Part shown: positions 1,929 through 46,500 of the stretch, one piece after another
How the letters are laid out: every line of letters begins with the position of its first letter
Numbering within the stretch: position 1 is the first letter of the stretch
Source: Podarcis bocagei
Lineage: Eukaryota
Assembly (NCBI GenBank): GCA_964188305.1
Contig: OZ076893.1
DNA: 64,000 nt
Direction: 5' to 3' (one strand)
Made by a program: the position numbers and the translations under genes
The notes under the pieces: generated by a model
The model's database searches: none
Told to the model about the DNA's origin: nothing
Seen by the model: only the letters and a program-made list of their open reading frames with translations

Positions 1929-4900
1929 TAAGAAAAAAAGGAACAAGTTTGCCCTGAGTTGGGGTGGGGGGTGCCACACAATTGATTCCCTCCCTCGTAA
2001 AACATACAGTATTAATTTGGGGTAAAATGTGCATAAAATGCATGTATTAGTGAAATCATCATACAAAAGTACATAATATGAGAGGGAAATGGTTTGAAAA
2101 AATGTGGAGAATAGGCAAAATTGAATTAAAAATGTATATATATTGGGGGGCAGGGAATGCGCTAAGGTGCCAATGAATTTTCATGGACATGAATTTGCAA
2201 ACTGATGTGAATATGTGAAGAACCAGACTTAAGACTGGACACATGAGTAATTAAGAGAAACCAAAGTTGGCATGTTCTCCCATCGCTAGATGTAGATCAG
2301 GTCAGTTTGCAATTGTCATTTCTCTAATTTCCACATCCTGCTGTTTCCTAGAATTCCCTACCACCCCATTGCTGCCTCATTACTACTTTTGCATAGTTCT
2401 CAGATGGACCTCTGGCTTTTATTAAGCCCTGTGCTAAGTGATAATAAACCATCAAGCAGATGTGAAACTCCATCCAGTAGTTCAAGGTTCCCCAACAGCT
2501 ATTTCAGCTTGCAGTGAATGAGTGTGCAATGCAATTTCATGGCAAATCAGACTTAGCCCATATGTATTCATTTACTTATATGAACATTCAGAGGCATAGC
2601 ATGGGAGGGGGGCTGGAGGGACAATTGCCCTGGGTGCAGTTTAAGGGGAGGGTGTGGGGCGTCGTGAGCTATTGCGCCCTTCTTAGCTGCCTTCCAGCTG
2701 GAGGGTGCCTGGGAAGGACGCAACAGCTCGTGGTGCCCTGTGAGTCCAGCACAGTTTTTGCAAGTCTTGAAAAGTGATACTGGGCTTGCAGGGCACTGTG
2801 AGTGCACCCCTCAAAGCTGGCTGGCCAGTGTGCAGGTTGCTCTGGCAGTGCACCCCAGCCCCATGGTGGGCTGAGTGTGCATACCCCAGTCAATGCCACT
2901 GTGAGTATCTTCAATCCTAGTGTCCGTGGCACTCAGTGCAGCTCTTGCCAGAAGGGTTTAAATGAGGACAGGGCAGCACTCTTGCACCCTTCTGCCCTTT
3001 TCCCATTAAAAAACAAAACAAAAACACTTTCCTCTCCTTTTGGAAACAACAGGAGATCCCGGACTGGTAAAAATTCCTCCTCAGGATTGCACAGGCATTG
3101 GCTCCTTCAGATCCAAGCCTTCTTGTGCTCCTTCTCTGAGCCCTGCCCCTTTTCATCCTGCCAGTGCCAGAGCTCTGTTTTCTGTAGGGTCAGGGCTGCA
3201 GAAATTGCCTCAAGGAGGTAAAACCTGACATGAGCTTCCTCTCTCCATGGTCAGAGCTTCCTTTCCTATCTTGGAGAAGATCTGATGTATCATGACACCT
3301 TCCCATAAAATCATAGCCGAAAATACAAGAAATACCACAATAAAAAATGCATAAAATAGAAAGGGGGGATTTGGTGTCCTGAGAGTGCCCCTCCCCCAAT
3401 CCTCCCCAACCTGTCCTTTATCTTGCCCAACCAAAGGTGTCAACCCTAGAGGAGGACATCTGCTTCTGATCTTAGGAAGCGGACAAGATGGTATGGGAGG
3501 AGAACTCTTGGGTCTAAACCATTAAACACAGATTCCTCTCTTGGATCTTCCTTCTACCTAGATCTCTTTCTTATGTGTTCCTCTTGCATAGCTTTAAACC
3601 CTATCTTAAGTTGTTATTTTTTTACTGTTTTTAGCTGTTCTTATTGTATATTTGTAAATGACCTTGTAAAAGAGAATTCATAAATTAAATGAAAAAGGAA
3701 TTAAGGGCTAGAAGTTATTGTATACAAAGCCCCTTTAGCTTTTACAGTGTACAGTAATATTAGTCAAGCTGACACTGTTCATTGGGCCTTGCACCCCAGT
3801 AAGTGTACATAGGAATGCAACCTTAGCCTCAGATTTTGAGTTGTAGGGGTTTTTTTATAACCACCTGATAGACAACGCTGCAGCTGAGCATATTTTGTAT
3901 AGAAAGGCTCACTGAACCATGACATTTAGGATCAAATATGTGGCATCTTGATCTATTTATTTTATGAGTTGCAGTGATGTGATCAGTGCTTTCATTCCAT
4001 GCATTCAAGGCAAACAAATACTGTGTGTAAAATGGTTTGCATCATACAGATGGCTTGCTGAGTTATCTAACACTTGCAATTTCGAATTTGGCACTCAGAA
4101 TAAAACACCAGAAAGCTTACAGAAGCGTGTCGGAATTATGACATTTCCACCTTTGAAGGACAATTGGGTTCTTGCAGAGGAATCTATGGGGTAGCAGAAG
4201 AGTTGTTTCCAAGGAAATAATCTAATTTAGGTTATAACAGGCATGTGGATCTTTTACAGCAGTTTACCTTCTTGCTTCAACCCCAGGGGATTCCTTGGTT
4301 AAAAGGTTTGTTTCCCTCATTTCTCACTTTTGTTGTTTGTACAGTACTGGAAAGGAAAGAGGCAACGGGAAGGGGAAACAGCTTCTATGTTTTGATCTGC
4401 AAGAAGCGTAAAAAGAATGCACTGTCCACATTGGAAGGTTACAGCAGGGGCACTTTGACAGGAGGGGGCTTCCATTGTTATAGTCCCACTTGCTCTGTGA
4501 ATTAACACCACCCTTGTGGCAAAATTAAACAGCGGCTTGGTTTACACCAGCTGACAGTGCAGCAAATATTCAGAGGTTTCTATATTGCTGTCTTACTGGT
4601 TCTACGTTGAAGTTTTGGCTTTTAAAAAAAAAATGCTTTAATGATATAATGTGTTTTAAACTGTACACCACTTTGATACTTTTGAAATATTGAGTGGCAT
4701 AAATGTGCTTTAAAAGAAAAGAAAATAAAATAATAAAAATAAATTATCCATTAGCAGATCACAGATTACAGGGGTCAGAAGAAACCCCTGCCCTAAGACC
4801 TTGTAGAGCTGCTATTTGTCAGAGAAAACCTACTGGGTAAGGTGGGCCTACTGCCTGCTTCAGTTAAGCAACCTCCTATGTTCGCTGATAAAACAGATCC

Positions 4901-22433: not shown

Positions 22434-22511
22434 TTATACTTTCTTGTTCCATGGCACTGCTTTTACTCTGTAGAATTTTGTACCCAAAGGAACTTTAAAT
22501 CTGTTTTGTGC
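22434..22511 (-). CDS. RB1CC1: RB1CC1 coding exon 22 (terminal)
   Basis: AQNRFKVPLGTKFYRVKAVPWNKKV* (TAA at 22436-22434); 78 nt. Confidence 0.96.
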   Translation of the reverse strand, partial: AQNRFKVPLGTKFYRVKAVPWNKKV

Positions 22512-25500
22512 CTAAGCAAAAACAAAAACACACATATGCAAAGAATTATTTGAAATATACCAGAGCTAGTCAGAAGACAATACTTTTTCATCTCATTTAT
22601 TGGCAGACGTGGTTGAGCTGGCAGCTGCATGGCATTTCCGCTGTGAATGGGCAATGCAACTAAATCTACGCAATTTAACAGAATAAGATATTTAAGTGAA
22701 ACTGAATCTCCTTTTGAGGTAAATTACTATTTCACCATCTAGTGGGCTATGGGCAAAAAATGTAATTTTGTGACACCTCAAAGCACTTGCTTCTTGATTA
22801 GCTATTGGCAGCAGCTCAGCAAATTACTAAAGTACTTGCCCGAAGATAATTAAAAGTATTTCATGGTTAGCCAAGCTTTTAGACTTAAGAAGTTGATCCA
22901 GAGCACTTTCATAAAAAATAGTGTTGATGGCTATGATATGTGAGGGATGAATTAAAAAGTTAACAATTACTTTATTTTTCTGTGCATAAGACTAGGTTTT
23001 TCCCCTAAAAAATAATGTCAAAAATTAGGGGGCGTCTTATACAGAGATACATCTCCCCCCTTTTTTTTCTTAAATCTGAGTCCCCCAAAATAGGGGGCAT
23101 CTTACAGACTGAAAAATATGGTACTTTAAATATTACTCCTACAACTGAGTTTAAGTAGTAGATAGGTAGCCGTGTTGGTCTGCCATAGTCAAAATAAAAA
23201 AAATATATCTTCCAGTAGCACCTTAAAGACCAACTAAGTTAGTTCTTGGTATGAGCTTTCGTGTGCATGCACACTTCTTCAGATACCTATCTGAAGAAGT
23301 GTGCATGCACACGAAAGCTCATACCAAGAACTAACTTAGTTGGTCTTTAAGGTGCTACTGGAAGATATATTTTTTTTATTTTAACTGAGTTTAAAACAGA
23401 GTTATGAGTAAGAATGAGGGTAAAGTTCCCTCTTAACTAAAAGGAACTCTTGCAACTATTTTCAATGAGCCATGCTGAAACTGAATATGTATCCTTACCT
23501 TTTTTGCCTGACAATATTCCTTTTCCATCACTTTTCCCAACACCCAGGGTCTTCGAGATGCTCCTGAAGCTGGAAGGAGAATATTTATTACTTGTGGCAT
23601 GATAATATCCAAACTACTTTAGGCACAAAAACGTCCATGGCCATTTATCTAGCAGGCACATTATAATCTTAATTTTAACTATGTGACGGAATAAAAAACT
23701 TCCATATACAAAATGTTACCTCAAATTGGTACAATATTCTAAACTCACAATCTTGCATTTAAATTTGAAAAAGCGTAAATGAATTTGAAAAAGCCTAAAT
23801 GGCAAAAATGTTTATAGTGGCATATTGTCATCTTTTTGCGACATACAGTGGTACCTCTGGATACGAACGGGATCCGTTCCGGATCCCCGTTCGCATCCTG
23901 AAGTGAACGCAACCCATGTCTGCAGGTCGCGATTCACCGCTTCCGCGCATGACGTCATTGACTGTCTGCGCATGCTTAAGCGGTGAAACCCAGAAGTAAC
24001 GCGTTGCGTTACTTCCGGGTCGCCGCGGAGTGCAACCCAAAAGCGCTCAACCTGAAGATATTTAACCCAAGGTATGACTGTACTGACAAAAGATATTGGT
24101 TTATTGTATGGTGCGTAAGAGGGATCTACTCTCACCAAGGAGCAATAGAAGATAAAAGCAGGCAGGCAGCTCACCTTCATCTCTGCTACACTTCAGTTGC
24201 CCAACCCAGCACCAAAGAAAACTTCCTTAGGCAACTTTAAAGCTACATGGACATTAATTAGTGGGGCATACTTTGATTCTTCATCTTTTTCATTCCACCT
24301 TCCCACAGCTGTCAACTTTTCCCTTTTTTTAAGGGAAATTCCCTTATTCCGAATAGAATTCATCACAAGAAAAGGGAAAAGTTGACAGCTATGCACCTTC
24401 CTCAAATCCACCCACCCACAGATATTGCTTCCCTGCTACTCATTAGAGAAGCAAAGCATTAAACCTCCATCCTCAATGCTGCTCAACTAATCTGCACAGA
24501 ACACTTAAGTAGCAGGAGAAAAAAGACTGCGGCTACACCCTCATTCTCCCACTGCTCAGTTCATTGGCAGGAGAGGACACCACAAGCTGTATAAAATTAA
24601 AACAGTGGGCTGCACGTAGTATGTGGCAAGGGATTGACCACCTCTGTACTACAGATAGAAACAAAGGGTATGTTTCTTGGTACATATGCATAATGGCTGG
24701 CAAATGTGCACATTGCCCAGAAAATGTAAAAAATGCAGTTAGGTTGTATACAATGCCCCACTCAAATACCTTTGGAGATAATGCATGGAAAATATGCGTG
24801 CAAAATACTATCAACTTGTAAGCATTCAAGAAGTCCTGCTGGAAAGTATATTGACTGGGAAATGTGCACAATTCCCTCTTCATGTTTACATTTTTCATAA
24901 TACGTGGGAATCATGCACTAGCCAGCGGTTATATATATACTGGCCCCAACACGTATATGTAATACATGCATTCACATGTTCAAACATAAATTTTAAGCAG
25001 ATTATTGCAAGACTGAATATTTAAATGCACCAGAAGAACATTCTCTCCAGAGTTATGACACTTACCACACTCACCTGGTTTGAGATCCAGTGCAGCAAGA
25101 GATTCTGAGTGTAAGAAATACAAAGTTGGGCTAACAGTAAATAATACATAGTTGTCGTGACGTTCATCCAAAATAATGAGAACCAAATCGCCAACCTGAA
25201 AACTGGATAAAAAATACAAGGCTCAGAAGAAAAGCAGCACGATTGTATTTTTGTTTACTCAGAGGAAAGCCCTACTAAGTTCAGTGGGCTTCCTCCTAGG
25301 AAAGAGACCACAAGATTGCAGCCTGCGTCATTATGCCCTTTACACACTTTGGTGCCGTGATATGCTTTTGAGGCATTATGTAGTTTTTGCTTTCACCAGC
25401 TAGGTATGGACATGCTGCCAGAATCGAGGACTTTTGTGTTGAACCAAAGGTGAAATGTTCTGGAAGGCCTGCAGACACTGTCTTGGTAGTCAAGATAACC

Positions 25501-40500: not shown

Positions 40501-43500
40501 CTGAAAAATGGACTGTATTGAGGCTTGGGCTTCTACACTCTCCTCTCCCTAACAAAAATAACAGTGGTTCCCTGTGACATCCAAACTCAAATAAAGGTAG
40601 TTTGTTTAAATGACAGCTTGAGAAGCCACAGTTTAACCTTTGCTTATTTTCATTAACCAAAGTTTAAAACAAATTACAGTTCTTAAGAGTTCTGAAGATA
40701 CTGTTTAAATTTAAACCAGAAGTTTTTGATCTCCTTTTATGGGTAACAAGAGGGGTGGAGAGGGAGAACCAGGCCTATGTGGAGTGTTCAAATTCCATCC
40801 ATCAATCAAAAGTTCAATTTCACTCTTGGATGGGGCAGCTTCAAAATCTTTTTTTAAAAACCTAATTCCTAAAAGATATCTGGGGAATAAATGAGTCCTG
40901 TGAATAGGAACAAAAACAAGTGCCACGGTTTTTAAGCAGCCCTATAGTTATATTTTAAGAGCACTTTTGTGTAGTATTTTGTCCTTGGTAAACTGCCAGA
41001 CTGATTTTTAAAAACTCCCCCATGCTGCTTTTCCATTAAAATCAAATTTTAAAAAGCCAGAATCTCAAATGATAAAACTCAGTGACTCTTAAAGCTATTT
41101 GTGCGCAGCCAGAAACATTGTTATGAATATCACTTTATGCTGTCAATGACTGATGTTTAAAAACAGAAATATTCTTCCATCATTCACTTAAGGAATTCAG
41201 TCTGCTCAGCTTGGACAGATGTATCACTTCCATCTGGCATTCAGTGCAAACTCCCCTTCATGATCAATAAACATTATGAGCTGGATCCAAAGGTTCCCTT
41301 TCACTATGTGGAGAATTCCTTTACTAGAAAAATGAGGGATTCTGCCCTATCAATCAAAAAGAATTTTGAATTTAGATGTGACAGTTTTAAAATAATGCAC
41401 ATTGTGCTTAAGTAATGCTGCAAGATTGTGTGAAGGTGCTTCTCTTATCCAACAACTTTTCACCCTAGGGGAAAGGTAATTTTTAAATTCTTTCTTACAC
41501 ACAGCTTGTGTTTAACATAGGGACTCCAATTTCATGGGGTGATTGATTGATTTAGGTCCACCTATCCATTGGAAGATAAAAAAGAAAAGATCTACACCCA
41601 ACAGGATGATGTGAAAAGCCGTATTAAGGAGGTTTGAATGAAGTCCTCAACTCAGGAGCTTGAACTATCTAAAAAGAAGCAGAAAAGCTCAGCATTTTTG
41701 CAATTGCAATGTATACTTACTAGCTTGAATACAGAAGTTCAATAGAAAAAGAACTACGTGCTCCTGAGCATAAGTCATATAATGATGGAATTAGGGATTG
41801 GTTTGAGCGAGGGGAAAGGATAAACACATCTAAGGAGACAAGATGCGTCTGAGCAAGAGCAGGAACCATTAATCCAAGAATAGAGAAAACCTTCTATAGT
41901 TTGAGATTGCACTTACTCAACTGACTACAAATTATATTAAGCACTGTTGGTTTATTTTATTTCATACATTAGAGGGCAACTTAATTCATACAGTACCTCT
42001 GATTAACTTGCATCTCTAGTTGCTGGATTTTCCCCAAAAGTTCTTTTTCAACAGCTTCCCTTTGCAATTCAAATTCTTTAAGGGCATTTCGGACTGCATC
42101 ATCTTTTTCACAGTTGAGCTTTTGAACAAGCAGTTTCCTGTCCTGTTCATGGTTAGTTAATAGTAGCTCTTTTTCTTCTGCAAACTTACTGATAGTGGCT
42201 TCATATTTCTTTTGCTGTTCACACAATACCAAATTTTCTTCTTTTTGCTTTTCTAGGGCACTGACTTCCAATTCTAGCTTACCTTGCAACTCTGTTATTT
42301 GTTCTTCCAATCTTTTTTCTGCTTCAAGAGCTTGTTGGTGCAAAGAAGTTACTTTACTTAATTCAGTTCTAAGCAAATTTGTTTCTTCTTCATGCCTATC
42401 AATTAATTCTGAAATGCACTGATCTTTCTCAATTGTCATTAAAGTTCTTAGCTCTGCTAGACCCACCTGATATTCATCATTATTAATTTGTATTACATGG
42501 TTCAAATTATCAATCTGTTTTCTTAACATTTCAGTTTCCTTGTCAATAAGACTTTTTAGATTATCTTGCTGTTGAGTTTTGTTTTCTTCTAAAAGTATTT
42601 TCATTTCATCTGTTTCTGCCTCTTTCAGTGCAAGTTCAACCTCTAATTTGCATCTTAAGTCAGACAGTTCAGAAACCTTGACCTTTAATTCCTCAATCTG
42701 TTGTTCTTTCTCATGGACATTTGCAGCATGAGTTTCTTGCATTTGTTCAAGTCGGAGTTTATTCTCCTTTTTCAACTCCTCTAAGCAATCATTGTGTTTA
42801 GCCATTAGTTCATCAAATTCTTGTGTATGTCTTTCCTGTAGATTGGATTCCAGTTCCTTTAAGTGATCTTGCTCCAAAGTCTGAAGTTCTGCTCTCAGAA
42901 GCTGCATTTTTTCATCGTTTTCAGTATGAAGTTTTTTCAAACTCTCCATCACCCTTTCACGTGACTCTCTTAGTTCTTTAATTTCACAACTCTGATTCTT
43001 CATTTGACTTTCCAATTCAAGCAATTTTTGCTCCTTTTCATTTTGTAAAAACACAACTGCTTCCTTTTCATTCTTTACTATTGCAAATTCATTATCTTTA
43101 TCATGCAAAACATCTTCAAGACCTTTTAAGTCACCTTTTAATTTTGTGATCTTTTTTTTGTTCTCTTCACCATCTTCAACTAAAGTATTCATTTTGCTTT
43201 CATATTCAGTTTTTACCAATTGCAGCTCTTTCTGGTGTTTATCTTTTAGCGTTTTTTCAAGAGAAAATTTTACTTTTTCTATAATATTCTTTATTTCTAT
43301 TGAAGTACATTTTAAAGAACTGGAAAGGTCACATTGTTCTTTTTCTACAAATGTTCTAAAATGACAAAGGTCTTCTTTTATGTTTATTAAATTTAACCGA
43401 GATTCCTCGGCAACATCTCTACATTTTTCCATATAAACATTTAAAGCAGAATTTTCTAAAGCTTCCGCTTTTGCACATATATTTGTATCTTGCATCCGCC

Positions 43501-46500
43501 TGCTGTCAATTGCATTGATGACTGAGGAATAGAGAGACTCCACCATCATTTCTGGACTTTGAGGATCACTTATCACATTCGGTGACGTTAGGTTTTCTTC
43601 TATTATGAACTCATTAACCGCTGACATAAAATCAGATTCTGGACTTTCTGCCAGTGAGTCCAAGTCTAATGACCCTTGCTTAAGGGCTTGTTCAATGCTT
43701 GGATGGGCAATCGTTTCAAAATCAAATGTATGAGCATCAATACTGTCTGGAGACAATTCTTCTAAAGGACCTGGGGGGCACACAGGAGGGCACAAAGGAC
43801 CATGAAGACTGAGTGGTGGAGGAGTTCTAGGAGAGGTAGCAATTGTTGTACTTTCCATCCTTGGTGTAGTGACAGACTGTGGTGAGGCTTGACTGTTGGA
43901 AGCCTAGAAGTATAAAACACAGGCCAGAGTTAAAATACTATCGTTCCATAAACATAAACAATTCCTAAGATAGGCCTCGAGCGGGCTCCATACATGTGGC
44001 AGGATTTCACATTAGAGAAGCAGGAATTCATAAAACCTTATGACATCTTACTGGCAGCTATAGGTAGCAGAAAGTAAAACCATGGTTAATCCAGGGCACA
44101 CCAGCAAATCTCATTTGATGCATCTTCTGAAGCTGCCTCATTCTTGCATCCCATCAGAGTTCCTTTCATTCTGTTTCATCCTTACTGTTCCTAGCTTAAT
44201 TTTTCTCCCCCCCTCTCCACTTTTATATCGTTTCAGAATATTTGAAACGGACAGTATTTTATCTGATAAAACATAAAGGAATTTCTAAACAACTTTTTTC
44301 CTGCTTGCATACTTTGGAGAAAATAACCCCCCTTCCAAACTGTCCAAAAATAAATTGGTATGCTTATGCTCTATTTCTGCGTGGATGTGTGTGCATAGTA
44401 TGCCGAAGTAAAATGGGAACTATTTTTACTTCCTTTCTAAAAAGGGCCTGGAAACTATATGCTTGTTGTACTAAAAATAAATGTTTTTATATGTATTGAG
44501 AACTAACATCAAAACCAGTGGGGTTTACTTCTGAGTAGACTTGTAGAAGACTAGGAATTCTAATCTGAGGTAGCCATAATGCTATTTGTGGCAGGGCAGC
44601 CTTTATTCTGAATCAGTTAATTGAGAACATTTTTGTCTCTGGCTCCATCGACTACCAACATGCAACCCACAACATTAAAAAACGTTGCCCACTCCTGTGC
44701 TAGAACATTATGTAGTAAACTGGTCATAATTAGTGTATGATACAGGTCCTGAAACACTTGTCAGATGGTAAATTACATTACTCTGAATTACCGGGATTTG
44801 CCCGTTTACATGCATTTATAGAAGTACAATTTTATTTAATAAGTGAATCACATAACACAAAGATATGAATGGAATCTAGCCATGATCACGCTCTAATTTC
44901 TACCTTAGTTTCTTTCAAGCTGTATCTCCTTAAATTAATTGTTTATTCAGGCTTTATGCTGTGTTGACAAAACAAGGTGCAAAAACTGAGTTCAGAAAAA
45001 GCACACTATAACTAAGAAGTGGATTCTGCTTCATTATCACATTTTCTTTCCATTCAATTAGTATTTTAAAGAAAAATATTTCCAATATTAGCCATGCAAG
45101 CCTAATTTAGGCTTGTAGCAAAATGCTTCCCAGTTAATATCAATAGTAAATTCCCAAGAAAAAATCTCCTGAGAATCAGAAATATGAACAGAAGCAGCCC
45201 CTATAACAATGCACTGAAAAAGAACACCAAGATAAATATTTTACAAATTTTCTCCTTGATTTAAGTCTCTCCATATGTTACCTTTCCAAGAAGGGTGGTG
45301 TAATAAACAATCAAAGGACGGACCCCTGATGAGGTGACAAGCTCACGGATTTGCAACAGATGCTTTCAGAAATACATAACTGACACTTAACTATGTTTAA
45401 ACCTGAAACGTTTTGTGATTAAGTATGTTACTTCAAATAAATGTTGTGAATAAGAGGTCCTAGGTACTTCAGAAACCCAACACTTAAGCACCACAAAATA
45501 TCTTTGGAGGTTAGGGAAAGCAACTTTTAGCTGACTGTTCCAGTATGTCCAATAAGTTGTGTTAACTTTACAAAAAATAGGAAAGCATTTAAAAAGGTCT
45601 GTTGTTTGGCAAAATGCCAAGATTTAAAGGATCAAACCCTCCTAGTTTCTCAATCAAAAATTTTAGGGCAGTTGACTGCGATATTATATAAAGTATGGGC
45701 AATAAGCTGCCAACTGCAGGCAGTTTGCCTTCTTGTAGAGACACTCCACAAGAAAAATTTACTGAAAGTTGGGTGCTCTCAGGAAAGGCCGGGAAACTGA
45801 GAAGCAACTTTTTTTTGTTCTTGTTCACAAAATACATTTCTCAGAAATATTCCTCACCGATTCACTTCACAACTTAGTTAATTTCTAAGTAATTGTGTTT
45901 AGGATTGGCATTCAACAATTTACCCATATATAAAAGTCACACATATAATACAATGGTACCTTTTGTTCATTCAGCAGATCTGTAATGGTCTGTGACATTT
46001 CATCCAAACTTTGTGCTGCTTTGACCAGATTATGTAGAGCAAGTACATGCTGGTGGAGAGGTTCGAAATCACAAAGTATAGGAACCCTTAAAAATACAGA
46101 GTAATTAACACAGATTACATTAAACAGATATTAACAGATTACAAGTGTTAACTGCATTTAAGAATATTTATATATAAAAATATACCACTTAGCATATTCA
46201 AAATCTTTAAGTAGTTTAGCGGTCATGGGGTTGGGTGAGTCCCACGTTGGGCAAACATTGCAAGGGGTTTGGACTAGATGACCCTCGTGATCCCTTCCAA
46301 TTCTACAGTTCTATGATTCTATGATTTACATAAAACAACACAATATTCAACAAAATTTCCAAACTCTAAGTTAAAAATGACAAAACACAACTGTATTATC
46401 ACAGATAAAACCAAACCATGCACAAAACAAAAATATACATAAAAATCAAGAGCCAAGAGTCCCAAAAGACATTTTAAAGATGTTTAAAAGTTCACAACTG

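What the first reader, a model, noticed from the sequence alone, without database searches (positions are those of the whole stretch)
23248..23287. Intact minimal hammerhead ribozyme motif on the sense strand of the last RB1CC1 intron
Seen: on the pre-mRNA strand, GGUAU CUGAAGA A GUGUGC-AU-GCACAC GAAA GC UC^AUACC has a complete core, perfect stems I and II, a UC cleavage site and a palindromic AGCU stem III. It has one extra A between A9 and G10.1. The + strand copy (23288-23325) has only 3 bp of stem I. Established: Penelope-like elements carry minimal type-I hammerheads that cleave mainly as dimers, and an extra nucleotide at that position is tolerated in some natural hammerheads. Inference: a potentially self-cleaving RNA sits ~210 nt downstream of the final 5' splice site of an essential autophagy gene; cleavage before splicing could detach the last Claw-domain exon.
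Basis: partly seen in the sequence, partly recalled or inferred. Interest (0 to 1): 0.75.

Follow-up and report, generated by a model that had tools for sequence, protein, structure and literature searches.

The report
Penelope retroelement fold-back with masked hammerhead
The hammerhead-ribozyme motif is really there. It is the ordinary signature of a young, very high-copy Penelope-like retroelement that landed as a perfect fold-back in the last intron of a lizard's RB1CC1 gene, and that fold-back locks the motif into a long hairpin, so it almost certainly does not cut the gene's RNA.

Summary
Observation confirmed. On the RB1CC1 sense (-) strand, 23287..23248 reads as a complete minimal type-I hammerhead: core CUGAAGA...GAAA, an extra A after A9, stem II, AGCU, and C17 at 23253. 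It lies 211 nt into the last coding intron. The + strand twin has a 3-bp stem I.

The motif is the centre of a 228-bp insertion (23155-23382). That insertion has a 12-bp target-site duplication, two perfectly complementary 95-nt arms, a 2-nt spacer and a one-sided 36-bp tail. These are the published hallmarks of 5'-truncated fold-back insertions of Penelope-like elements (PLEs). The extra nucleotide, G10.1-C11.1 and the palindromic AGCU are published PLE min-hammerhead traits.

DNA contigs of two lizard runs give roughly 10^4-10^5-fold excess depth over the element. One species keeps the empty site.

The functional inference is not supported:
- PLE min-hammerheads are inactive as monomers, and the window holds no sense-strand partner.
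- The antisense arm is transcribed first, and the hairpin (-175 kcal/mol) beats the ribozyme fold by about 60 kcal/mol.
- RNA reads cross the cut site with no pile-up of ends.
- The anole Poseidon hammerhead needs its own protein.

The scan has noted the same kind of fold-back in other introns of this genome. This is an ordinary member of a known kind, of low interest.

The parts
23143..23154 (.). Left copy of the 12-bp target-site duplication AACTGAGTTTAA
   Evidence: Exact direct repeat D5. The empty-site contig of run X2 joins 23142 directly to 23383 (table 8, record 10).
23155..23190 (-). 36-bp AC-rich 'tail', present at one end only. It is the 3' end of the - strand copy.
   Evidence: It is not part of the inverted repeat. 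A one-sided 30-40-bp tail is a published PLE hallmark (PMC8557442). It corresponds to the stretch between the two reverse-transcription start sites (PMC11167929).
23191..23285 (-). Arm 1: the 5'-truncated PLE 3' end in RB1CC1 sense orientation. It holds the hammerhead motif.
   Evidence: 95 nt with 0 mismatches to the reverse complement of 23288-23382. DNA contig depth here is about 10^6, against 38 in single-copy flank.
23248..23287 (-). Minimal type-I hammerhead motif on the pre-mRNA strand; C17 = 23253, predicted cut 23253|23252
   Evidence: Taken alone it folds with stems I and II at -11.6 kcal/mol. In context it is buried in the hairpin.
23286..23287 (.). 2-nt spacer (CC on +, GG on -) at the axis of the palindrome
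   Evidence: 2 nt between the arms. Most expressed family copies diverge from the window after 23286 (table 7).
23288..23382 (+). Arm 2: an inverted, 5'-truncated PLE 3' end without a tail. It carries the twin hammerhead (23288-23325, predicted cut 23320|23321, stem I 3 bp). In the RB1CC1 pre-mRNA it reads as the antisense of the ribozyme and is transcribed first.
23383..23394 (.). Right copy of the target-site duplication
   Evidence: D5; empty site.
22512..23498 (-). Last coding intron of RB1CC1 (987 nt, GT..AG), host of the insertion
   Evidence: The flanking exon pieces match consecutive residues 54-76 and 77-101 of 6dce_A.
23499..23569 (-). Penultimate coding exon of RB1CC1 (Claw domain)
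   Evidence: splice sites; E = 3.7e-11 to the RB1CC1 Claw structure.
22434..22511 (-). Coding part of the last RB1CC1 exon (25 codons plus TAA)

Best explanation
The motif is the hammerhead that every canonical Penelope-like retroelement (PLE) carries near the 3' end of its RNA.

Here, only the last 95 to 131 nt of such an RNA were reverse-transcribed into an A/T-rich site in the last RB1CC1 intron. They were copied as two head-to-head copies. This made a 228-bp perfect fold-back flanked by a 12-bp target-site duplication, with the PLE-specific 36-bp tail at one end.

Inferred mechanism of insertion: the GIY-YIG endonuclease and reverse transcriptase of an active PLE cut and extended both DNA strands, or the enzyme snapped back on its own cDNA. 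Both copies stopped within 1-2 nt of the same template position, at the 5' edge of hammerhead stem I.

The insertion is young. The arms show no differences, the site is empty in another species, and the family is highly homogeneous. It is one of roughly 10^4-10^5 family copies.

In the RB1CC1 pre-mRNA the hammerhead is preceded by its exact antisense. It is therefore caught co-transcriptionally in a duplex of about 98 bp and cannot fold. It has no function for the gene. At most, the intron carries a long dsRNA hairpin that is spliced out and degraded.
For: Anatomy:
- Inverted repeat, 2-nt spacer and 12-bp direct repeat.
- 95-nt arms with 0 mismatches, and a 36-bp one-sided tail.

Published PLE hallmarks that match:
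- The tail corresponds to the sequence between two internal reverse-transcription start sites, and both DNA strands are cleaved and extended by the anole enzyme (PMC11167929).

Published min-hammerhead traits that match (PMC4209133):
- G10.1-C11.1;
- palindromic 15.2-16.2;
- a long helix II and a 4-5-bp helix I;
- motif pairs on opposite strands;
- presence in reptiles.

Copy number and age:
- 7,693 contigs (X1) and 6,468 contigs (X2) lie on the element.
- Summed depth is 0.75-2.0 x 10^6 against 37.9 in the unique flank.
- About a third of the contigs are 99% or more alike.
- Many other contigs join the two arms at other points.
- X2 record 10 joins 23142 to 23383, which is the empty site.

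Masking:
- Hairpin minimum free energy is -175 kcal/mol, z = -25.
- The hammerhead alone folds at -11.6 kcal/mol.
- Forcing stems I and II costs +59.6 kcal/mol, and the hairpin nucleates as soon as 23280 is transcribed.

No cis partner.

RNA:
- 99% of laid reads come from other copies.
- 361 and 269 reads run through the motif into upstream family sequence.
- No begin or end pile-up at 23252/23253 or 23320/23321.
Against: - No PLE open reading frame (RT or GIY-YIG) lies in this copy or elsewhere in the window, so the link to PLEs rests on structural hallmarks and on the motif type. The anole Poseidon consensus shows no evident sequence similarity in the flanks.
- Rfam has no model that recognises the motif.
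- Locus-specific RNA coverage of the intron was essentially nil (0-2 reads), so nothing was measured on the RB1CC1 transcript itself.
- The end-pile-up table only reports ends that reach a fifth of local depth, so rare cleavage would be missed.
- Helicases, ADAR editing or a PLE protein could in principle open the hairpin in vivo.
- The filled allele was not bridged by a single contig in X1, because unitigs break at the repeat edges.
Confidence: 0.86

Rival explanations
1. The sense-strand hammerhead is an active, or conditionally active, self-cleaving ribozyme. It cuts the RB1CC1 pre-mRNA 245 nt into the last intron and lowers the yield of mRNA carrying the last Claw-domain exon.
For: - The core and stems are complete, and the isolated 48-mer adopts stems I and II as its minimum-energy fold.
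- Conserved intronic hammerheads exist in amniote genes such as RECK and DTNB (PMC6155905).
- Fast ribozymes in introns can abort splicing (PMC2995048).
Against: - Monomeric PLE min-hammerheads are inactive in vitro, and dimers are only weakly active (PMC4209133).
- There is no sense partner in the window.
- The hammerhead fold pays a 59.6 kcal/mol penalty against the hairpin, and the antisense arm is made first.
- The anole PLE hammerhead needs its protein, and no in vivo ends were found (PMC11167929).
- No end pile-up appears across family RNAs.
- The site is empty in another species, so nothing is conserved for the gene.
- Slow hammerheads in introns do not impair splicing (PMC2995048).
- The motif lacks the loop-loop tertiary contacts of the fast intronic hammerheads.
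Confidence: 0.03
2. The relevant product is the hairpin, not the ribozyme. The perfect intronic dsRNA of 95-98 bp is processed by Dicer/Drosha or edited by ADAR. It then yields small RNAs against PLE transcripts, or it modulates local splicing or the dsRNA sensing of RB1CC1 pre-mRNA.
For: - The hairpin is extremely stable and perfect (-175 kcal/mol, z = -25).
- Generic miRNA-precursor models score it, though all below their thresholds.
- The family is transcribed from both strands.
- The scan's notes report many such fold-backs in other introns of this genome (unchecked).
Against: - No small-RNA data were available.
- The Rfam hits are far below gathering scores and only reflect 'a long hairpin'.
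- The A>G differences seen in RNA are also present in DNA contigs, so they are paralogue variation and not editing (table 3).
- The insertion is young and is not shared with another species, so any effect is a by-product and not a selected function.
Confidence: 0.08
3. A chance match or an assembly artefact. On this view the palindrome is a mis-assembly of a repeat and the motif is a coincidence.
For: - Fold-back PLE structures are known to trouble short-read assemblies (PMC8557442).
- No single contig in X1 bridges the filled allele.
Against: - 0 hits in 300 shuffles, and 0.01 matches expected against 2 found.
- The element has a clean 12-bp target-site duplication whose single copy sits at the matching empty site in another species.
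- Thousands of independent contigs carry the same module, including other fold-back junctions.
Confidence: 0.02

Closest known systems
Minimal hammerhead ribozymes of metazoan Penelope-like elements (Cervera & de la Pena 2014, PMC4209133)
   Same: - Type-I topology and a CUGANGA...GAAA core.
- One unpaired nucleotide between A9 and G10.1, and a G10.1-C11.1 pair.
- A long helix II and a 4-5-bp helix I.
- Helix III reduced to A15.1-U16.1 around a palindromic GC (AGCU).
- Copies often occur as pairs on opposite strands or as solitary truncated elements.
- Reported in reptiles.
   Different: Nothing essential. This copy sits in a fold-back whose axis lies exactly at the 5' edge of stem I, so the motif is immediately preceded by its own antisense.
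Poseidon_Ac (PAc), the Penelope-like element of Anolis carolinensis (PMC11167929)
   Same: - A squamate PLE with a hammerhead a few tens of nt upstream of the 3' ends of genomic copies.
- An optional 30-40-bp tail defined by two reverse-transcription start sites.
- Both target strands are cleaved and extended.
- The hammerhead is not needed for insertion in vitro, is active only with the element's protein, and leaves no cleavage ends in RNA-seq.
   Different: It is a different family. I saw no evident sequence similarity between the window's element and the Poseidon_Ac consensus (by eye). In PAc the ORF starts in helix II. Here the ATG in loop II meets a stop after 9 codons.
Complex tandem/inverted PLE insertions (Evgen'ev & Arkhipova 2005; Craig et al. 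2021, PMC8557442)
   Same: A 5'-truncated copy with an inverted 5'-truncated copy abutting its 5' end, a one-sided tail, and a target-site duplication.
   Different: This is an extreme case. Only about 95 nt of each copy was retained, so the whole insertion is a hairpin with no ORF or pLTR body.
Conserved intronic hammerheads of amniotes (HH9/HH10 type; RECK, DTNB, CTCL; de la Pena & Garcia-Robles 2010, reviewed in PMC6155905)
   Same: A type-I hammerhead on the sense strand of an intron of a protein-coding gene. Those ribozymes are thought to derive from retroelement hammerheads.
   Different: Those are canonical ribozymes with loop-loop tertiary contacts. They are conserved across orders or classes, and Rfam models recognise them. 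This one lacks helix III and tertiary contacts, is lineage-specific, and is not recognised by Rfam.

Membership tests
PLE minimal hammerhead (min-HHR descriptor of Cervera & de la Pena 2014) | Conserved core boxes CUGANGA and GAAA, with U16.1-H17 at the cleavage site | tested here: met
   CUGAAGA 23282-23276, GAAA 23260-23257, U 23254, C17 23253.
PLE minimal hammerhead (min-HHR descriptor of Cervera & de la Pena 2014) | [quoted passage not shown] | tested here: met
   A23275 is unpaired. G23274 pairs with C23261.
PLE minimal hammerhead (min-HHR descriptor of Cervera & de la Pena 2014) | Helix III absent or minimal, with palindromic 15.2-16.2 that allows a dimeric helix III | tested here: met
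   A15.1-G-C-U16.1 reads AGCU. My descriptor required a palindromic insert.
PLE minimal hammerhead (min-HHR descriptor of Cervera & de la Pena 2014) | Self-cleavage activity (as a dimer) | not testable with these tools
   No wet assay was possible. Indirectly, there is no sense partner in the window, the fold is out-competed by 59.6 kcal/mol, and no read-end pile-up appears at the cut site.
Penelope-like element insertion | A target-site duplication of variable length flanking the insertion | tested here: met
   12-bp AACTGAGTTTAA on both sides. A single copy sits at the empty site in run X2.
Penelope-like element insertion | 5' truncation with an inverted 5'-truncated copy abutting, and a 30-40-bp tail at one end only | tested here: met
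   95-nt perfect arms, a 2-nt spacer, and a 36-bp tail at 23155-23190 on one side only. The description is in PMC8557442 and PMC11167929.
Penelope-like element insertion | The family includes autonomous copies that encode an RT plus a GIY-YIG endonuclease | not tested
   No ORF lies in this copy or in the window. The lizard genome is not searchable with these tools. An unchecked scan note (s1-340143) reports an intact PLE with hammerheads elsewhere in this genome. Collection scans for the motif found nothing.
Penelope-like element insertion | Sequence similarity of the flanks to a described pLTR | tested here: inconclusive
   The only described squamate PLE sequence I could read (the Poseidon_Ac consensus) belongs to another family and shows no evident similarity beyond the motif architecture. 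The comparison was by eye only.
Rfam hammerhead families (Hammerhead_1/3/II, HH9, HH10) | A score at or above the family's gathering threshold | tested here: not met
   No hammerhead hit at gathering score on the window. None at E up to 10 on 261 nt or on 56 nt. This is expected, because those models include a helix III that min-HHRs lack.
Conserved intronic hammerheads of amniotes | Orthologous conservation in the same intron across species | tested here: not met
   The orthologous site is empty in the species of run X2 (record 10).

The most novel reading that the evidence does not exclude
Fold-back PLE insertions such as this one are 'self-masked' ribozymes and, at the same time, perfect intronic dsRNA hairpins. 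Spread over many introns of expressed genes, they could act as a genome-wide source of hairpin-derived small RNAs that silence the still-active PLE family. Alternatively, the hammerhead could become active only where helicases, ADAR editing or the PLE protein open the hairpin, which would make host transcripts sensitive to PLE activity.
Probability: 0.05. Interest if true: 0.55.

Novelty: new member of a known kind. Interest (0 to 1): 0.15.

Why it matters
It matters little for RB1CC1. The insertion is a young, lineage-specific, intronic retroelement scar, and its ribozyme motif is structurally locked.

It has some use as a clean, datable example of how PLEs insert. It shows a target-site duplication, a one-sided tail, and two cDNAs that meet at the 5' edge of the hammerhead, and an empty site survives in a sister species. 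It also shows that a very young, very abundant hammerhead-bearing PLE family populates lacertid genomes.

It is a caution for motif scans as well. A complete hammerhead core in an intron of an essential gene is expected many times over in such genomes, and it says nothing about gene regulation.

Tried and rejected
- Rfam. A search at gathering score on the whole window, and permissive searches on 261 nt and 56 nt, gave no hammerhead family. Only sub-threshold miRNA-hairpin models hit, and they simply detect the palindrome. I rejected them as evidence for a miRNA.
- Other copies in the window. A sensitive blastn of the arm against the window found none. The best extra hit (4727-4765) is A/T-rich low complexity.
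- Public collections. Exact and degenerate motif scans of metagenome and viral contig collections found nothing. I could therefore build no family alignment and could run no covariation test.
- Anole comparison. The Poseidon_Ac consensus is a different family, with no usable flank similarity.
- Locus-specific expression and cleavage. The two raw RNA-seq runs gave 0-2 reads on the unique intron parts, so they carry only family-level information.
- A-to-I editing. The A>G sites in RNA are also variable in DNA contigs, so I rejected them as editing.
- Spliced model. Exons were searched one by one, by reference.
- Operators' limits. 
Full report
**What is in the sequence.** Read on the - strand, 23287..23248 is GGUAU-CUGAAGA-A-GUGUGCAUGCACAC-GAAA-GC-U-C^AUACC.
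- the C3-A9 box;
- one extra A (23275);
- a G10.1-C11.1-closed helix II;
- G12-A14 and A15.1;
- a palindromic AGCU in place of helix III;
- C17 at 23253;
- a 5-bp helix I.

The + strand carries the same core at 23291-23320 with a 3-bp helix I. A loose pattern search finds these two sites against 0.01 expected. A scripted min-hammerhead descriptor requires helices I and II, an optional bulge, a palindromic insert and U-H. It finds only this site in 64 kb and none in 300 shuffles.

Two refinements apply. Helix II folds as 5 bp with a CAUG loop. The fifth helix-I pair uses G23287, a spacer base of the palindrome that differs from what most expressed family copies carry (table 7).

**Gene context.** I searched three - strand exon pieces one by one, by reference, against solved structures. 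They match consecutive residues 6-48, 54-76 and 77-101 (the C-terminus) of the RB1CC1/FIP200 Claw domain, e.g. 6dce_A.

| Feature | Coordinates (- strand) |
|---|---|
| Penultimate coding exon | 23569..23499, ending AAG\|GTAAGG |
| Last coding exon | starts 22511 after ...TTGCTTAG; encodes 25 residues and TAA |
| Last coding intron | 23498..22512, 987 nt |

The motif begins 211 nt into this intron.

**What the motif belongs to.** The motif is the centre of a 228-bp insertion, 23155-23382. Its anatomy:
- It is flanked by an exact 12-bp direct repeat, AACTGAGTTTAA (23143-54 and 23383-94).
- It consists of two arms of 95 nt (23191-23285 and 23288-23382) that are 100% complementary.
- The arms are separated by 2 nt.
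- A 36-bp AC-rich extension (23155-23190) is present on one side only.

The repeat finder's '99 nt, 99%' arms include a 4-nt chance extension into the target-site duplication, and that extension holds the single mismatch.

This is the published signature of Penelope-like element (PLE) insertions. It comprises strong 5' truncation, an inverted 5'-truncated copy abutting the 5' end, a 30-40-bp tail at one end only, and hammerheads in the terminal repeats (PMC8557442). The tail corresponds to the sequence between two internal reverse-transcription start sites. The anole Poseidon enzyme cleaves and extends both target strands (PMC11167929), which gives a ready route to head-to-head copies.

The motif's details are the family traits listed by Cervera & de la Pena (PMC4209133):
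- a nucleotide between 9 and 10.1;
- G10.1-C11.1;
- palindromic 15.2-16.2;
- a long helix II and a short helix I.

That paper also reports motif pairs on opposite strands, and reports the motifs in reptiles. The 'extra A' is therefore not a defect that happens to be tolerated. It is diagnostic of the family.

**Abundance and age.** I laid public runs on the intron.
- In two DNA runs of different lizard species labels, 7,693 and 6,468 contigs lie on the element.
- Summed depth is 0.75-2.0 x 10^6 (X1) against 37.9 in the adjoining unique flank. As a rough guide only, that is 10^4-10^5 copies.
- About a third of the contigs are at least 99% alike.
- Many contigs join the two arms at other, often mirror-symmetric, points. 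These are other fold-back copies.
- No variant reaches 10% frequency inside the 40-nt motif among the rows shown, while the rest of the arm has several. Each of those is seen at mirrored positions in both arms.
- In run X2 a 615-nt contig runs 23015-23142 and continues directly at 23383-23495. This is the empty site with one copy of the 12-mer.

Together with the zero differences between the arms, this shows a recent, lineage-specific insertion. A precise deletion between the 12-bp repeats is the less parsimonious alternative.

The scan's own notes list the same kind of fold-back in introns of IGF2BP3, KMT2C, VXN, SPAG1 and HOXD11 in this genome, which another note calls a wall lizard. These notes are unchecked, but they agree with the depth data.

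**Can it cleave the RB1CC1 pre-mRNA?** Six lines of evidence say almost certainly not.
1. *Intrinsic activity.* PLE min-hammerheads show no detectable self-cleavage as monomers. As tandem dimers they show only low activity (PMC4209133). In a 2026 preprint, one of nine frog dimer constructs cleaved.
2. *No partner.* The sense strand has no second hammerhead anywhere in the window. The adjacent copy is its antisense.
3. *Folding.* The 261-nt - strand RNA folds into a hairpin of about 98 bp at -175 kcal/mol (z = -25). The isolated motif reaches -11.6 kcal/mol. The best structure that keeps helices I and II is 59.6 kcal/mol worse than the hairpin. Because the antisense arm is transcribed first, the minimum-energy structure of the growing chain is the hairpin from the moment 23280 is made.
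4. *The closest tested relative.* The anole Poseidon hammerhead does not cleave without the element's protein and is dispensable for insertion in vitro. No RNA-seq reads begin or end at its cut site (PMC11167929).
5. *RNA reads.* In two bulk RNA-seq runs, 99% of the reads on the element continue into unlike sequence, so they come from other copies. Hundreds of reads run through the motif into upstream family sequence. No accumulation of ends is reported at 23252/23253 or 23320/23321. Coverage of the unique intron parts was 0-2 reads, so the locus itself was not measured.
6. *Splicing tolerates slow cleavage.* Even a working slow hammerhead in an intron does not prevent splicing in vivo. Only fast ribozymes do (PMC2995048, summarising Dye et al. 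2006 and the Bentley group).

**Comparison with known systems.** This is a member of the PLE min-hammerhead kind. It is an extreme example (hairpin only) of the known inverted PLE insertion.

It is not a member of the Rfam hammerhead families. There was no hit even at E up to 10, because those models require helix III. It is also not one of the conserved intronic hammerheads of amniotes, because the orthologous site is empty in another species.

One membership feature was not tested: linkage of this 3' module to an RT/GIY-YIG reading frame. The lizard genome cannot be searched here, and collection scans found nothing. The anole consensus is a different family.

**Verdict.** The identification as a Penelope-type hammerhead is supported. 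The regulatory inference is not supported. This is an ordinary copy of a known kind, and interest is low.

The least conventional reading still open is that such perfect intronic hairpins feed small-RNA or editing pathways, or unmask the ribozyme under special conditions. I put that at about 5%.

Noticed in passing
window 22949-23113: A second, unrelated high-copy repeat lies directly beside the insertion. DNA contig depth is 5x10^3 to 6.7x10^4, against 38 in single-copy flank. RNA depth reaches 115. The repeat contains two GGGGGC-R-TCTTA-Y-A boxes. I did not identify it.
   Followed up: partly
window 23358 and 23222|23221 (- strand): On the RB1CC1 sense strand, the first arm ends a 3' splice-site-like CTTCCAG and the second arm holds a 5' splice-site-like AAG|GT. 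A 136-nt cryptic exon is therefore conceivable. No junction reads were seen, but locus-specific RNA coverage was about zero.
   Followed up: no
window 23286-23288: Both inverted copies stop within 1-2 nt of the same template position, exactly at the 5' edge of hammerhead helix I. DNA contigs of other copies also diverge at 23286/23287 with low agreement (0.39-0.42). This suggests a preferred 5' end or a preferred turn-around point of reverse transcription in this family.
   Followed up: partly
window 23234-23338 (joints, table 5): Dozens of contigs from two species join the two arms at other points, for example 23238 to 23334 and 23244 to 23331. Fold-back copies with different arm lengths are therefore common genome-wide.
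   Followed up: partly
window 23268-23239 (- strand): The ATG in hammerhead loop II opens a frame that stops after 9 codons. In the anole Poseidon element the ORF starts at the equivalent place. A second ATG lies in the 36-bp tail (23186-23184, - strand).
   Followed up: no
window 22434-59776 (- strand): Most of RB1CC1 lies in the window on the - strand. The ubiquitin-like N-terminal exon lies near 59.5 kb, the large central exon at 41984-43903, and the Claw exons at about 25.1, 23.5 and 22.5 kb.
   Followed up: partly
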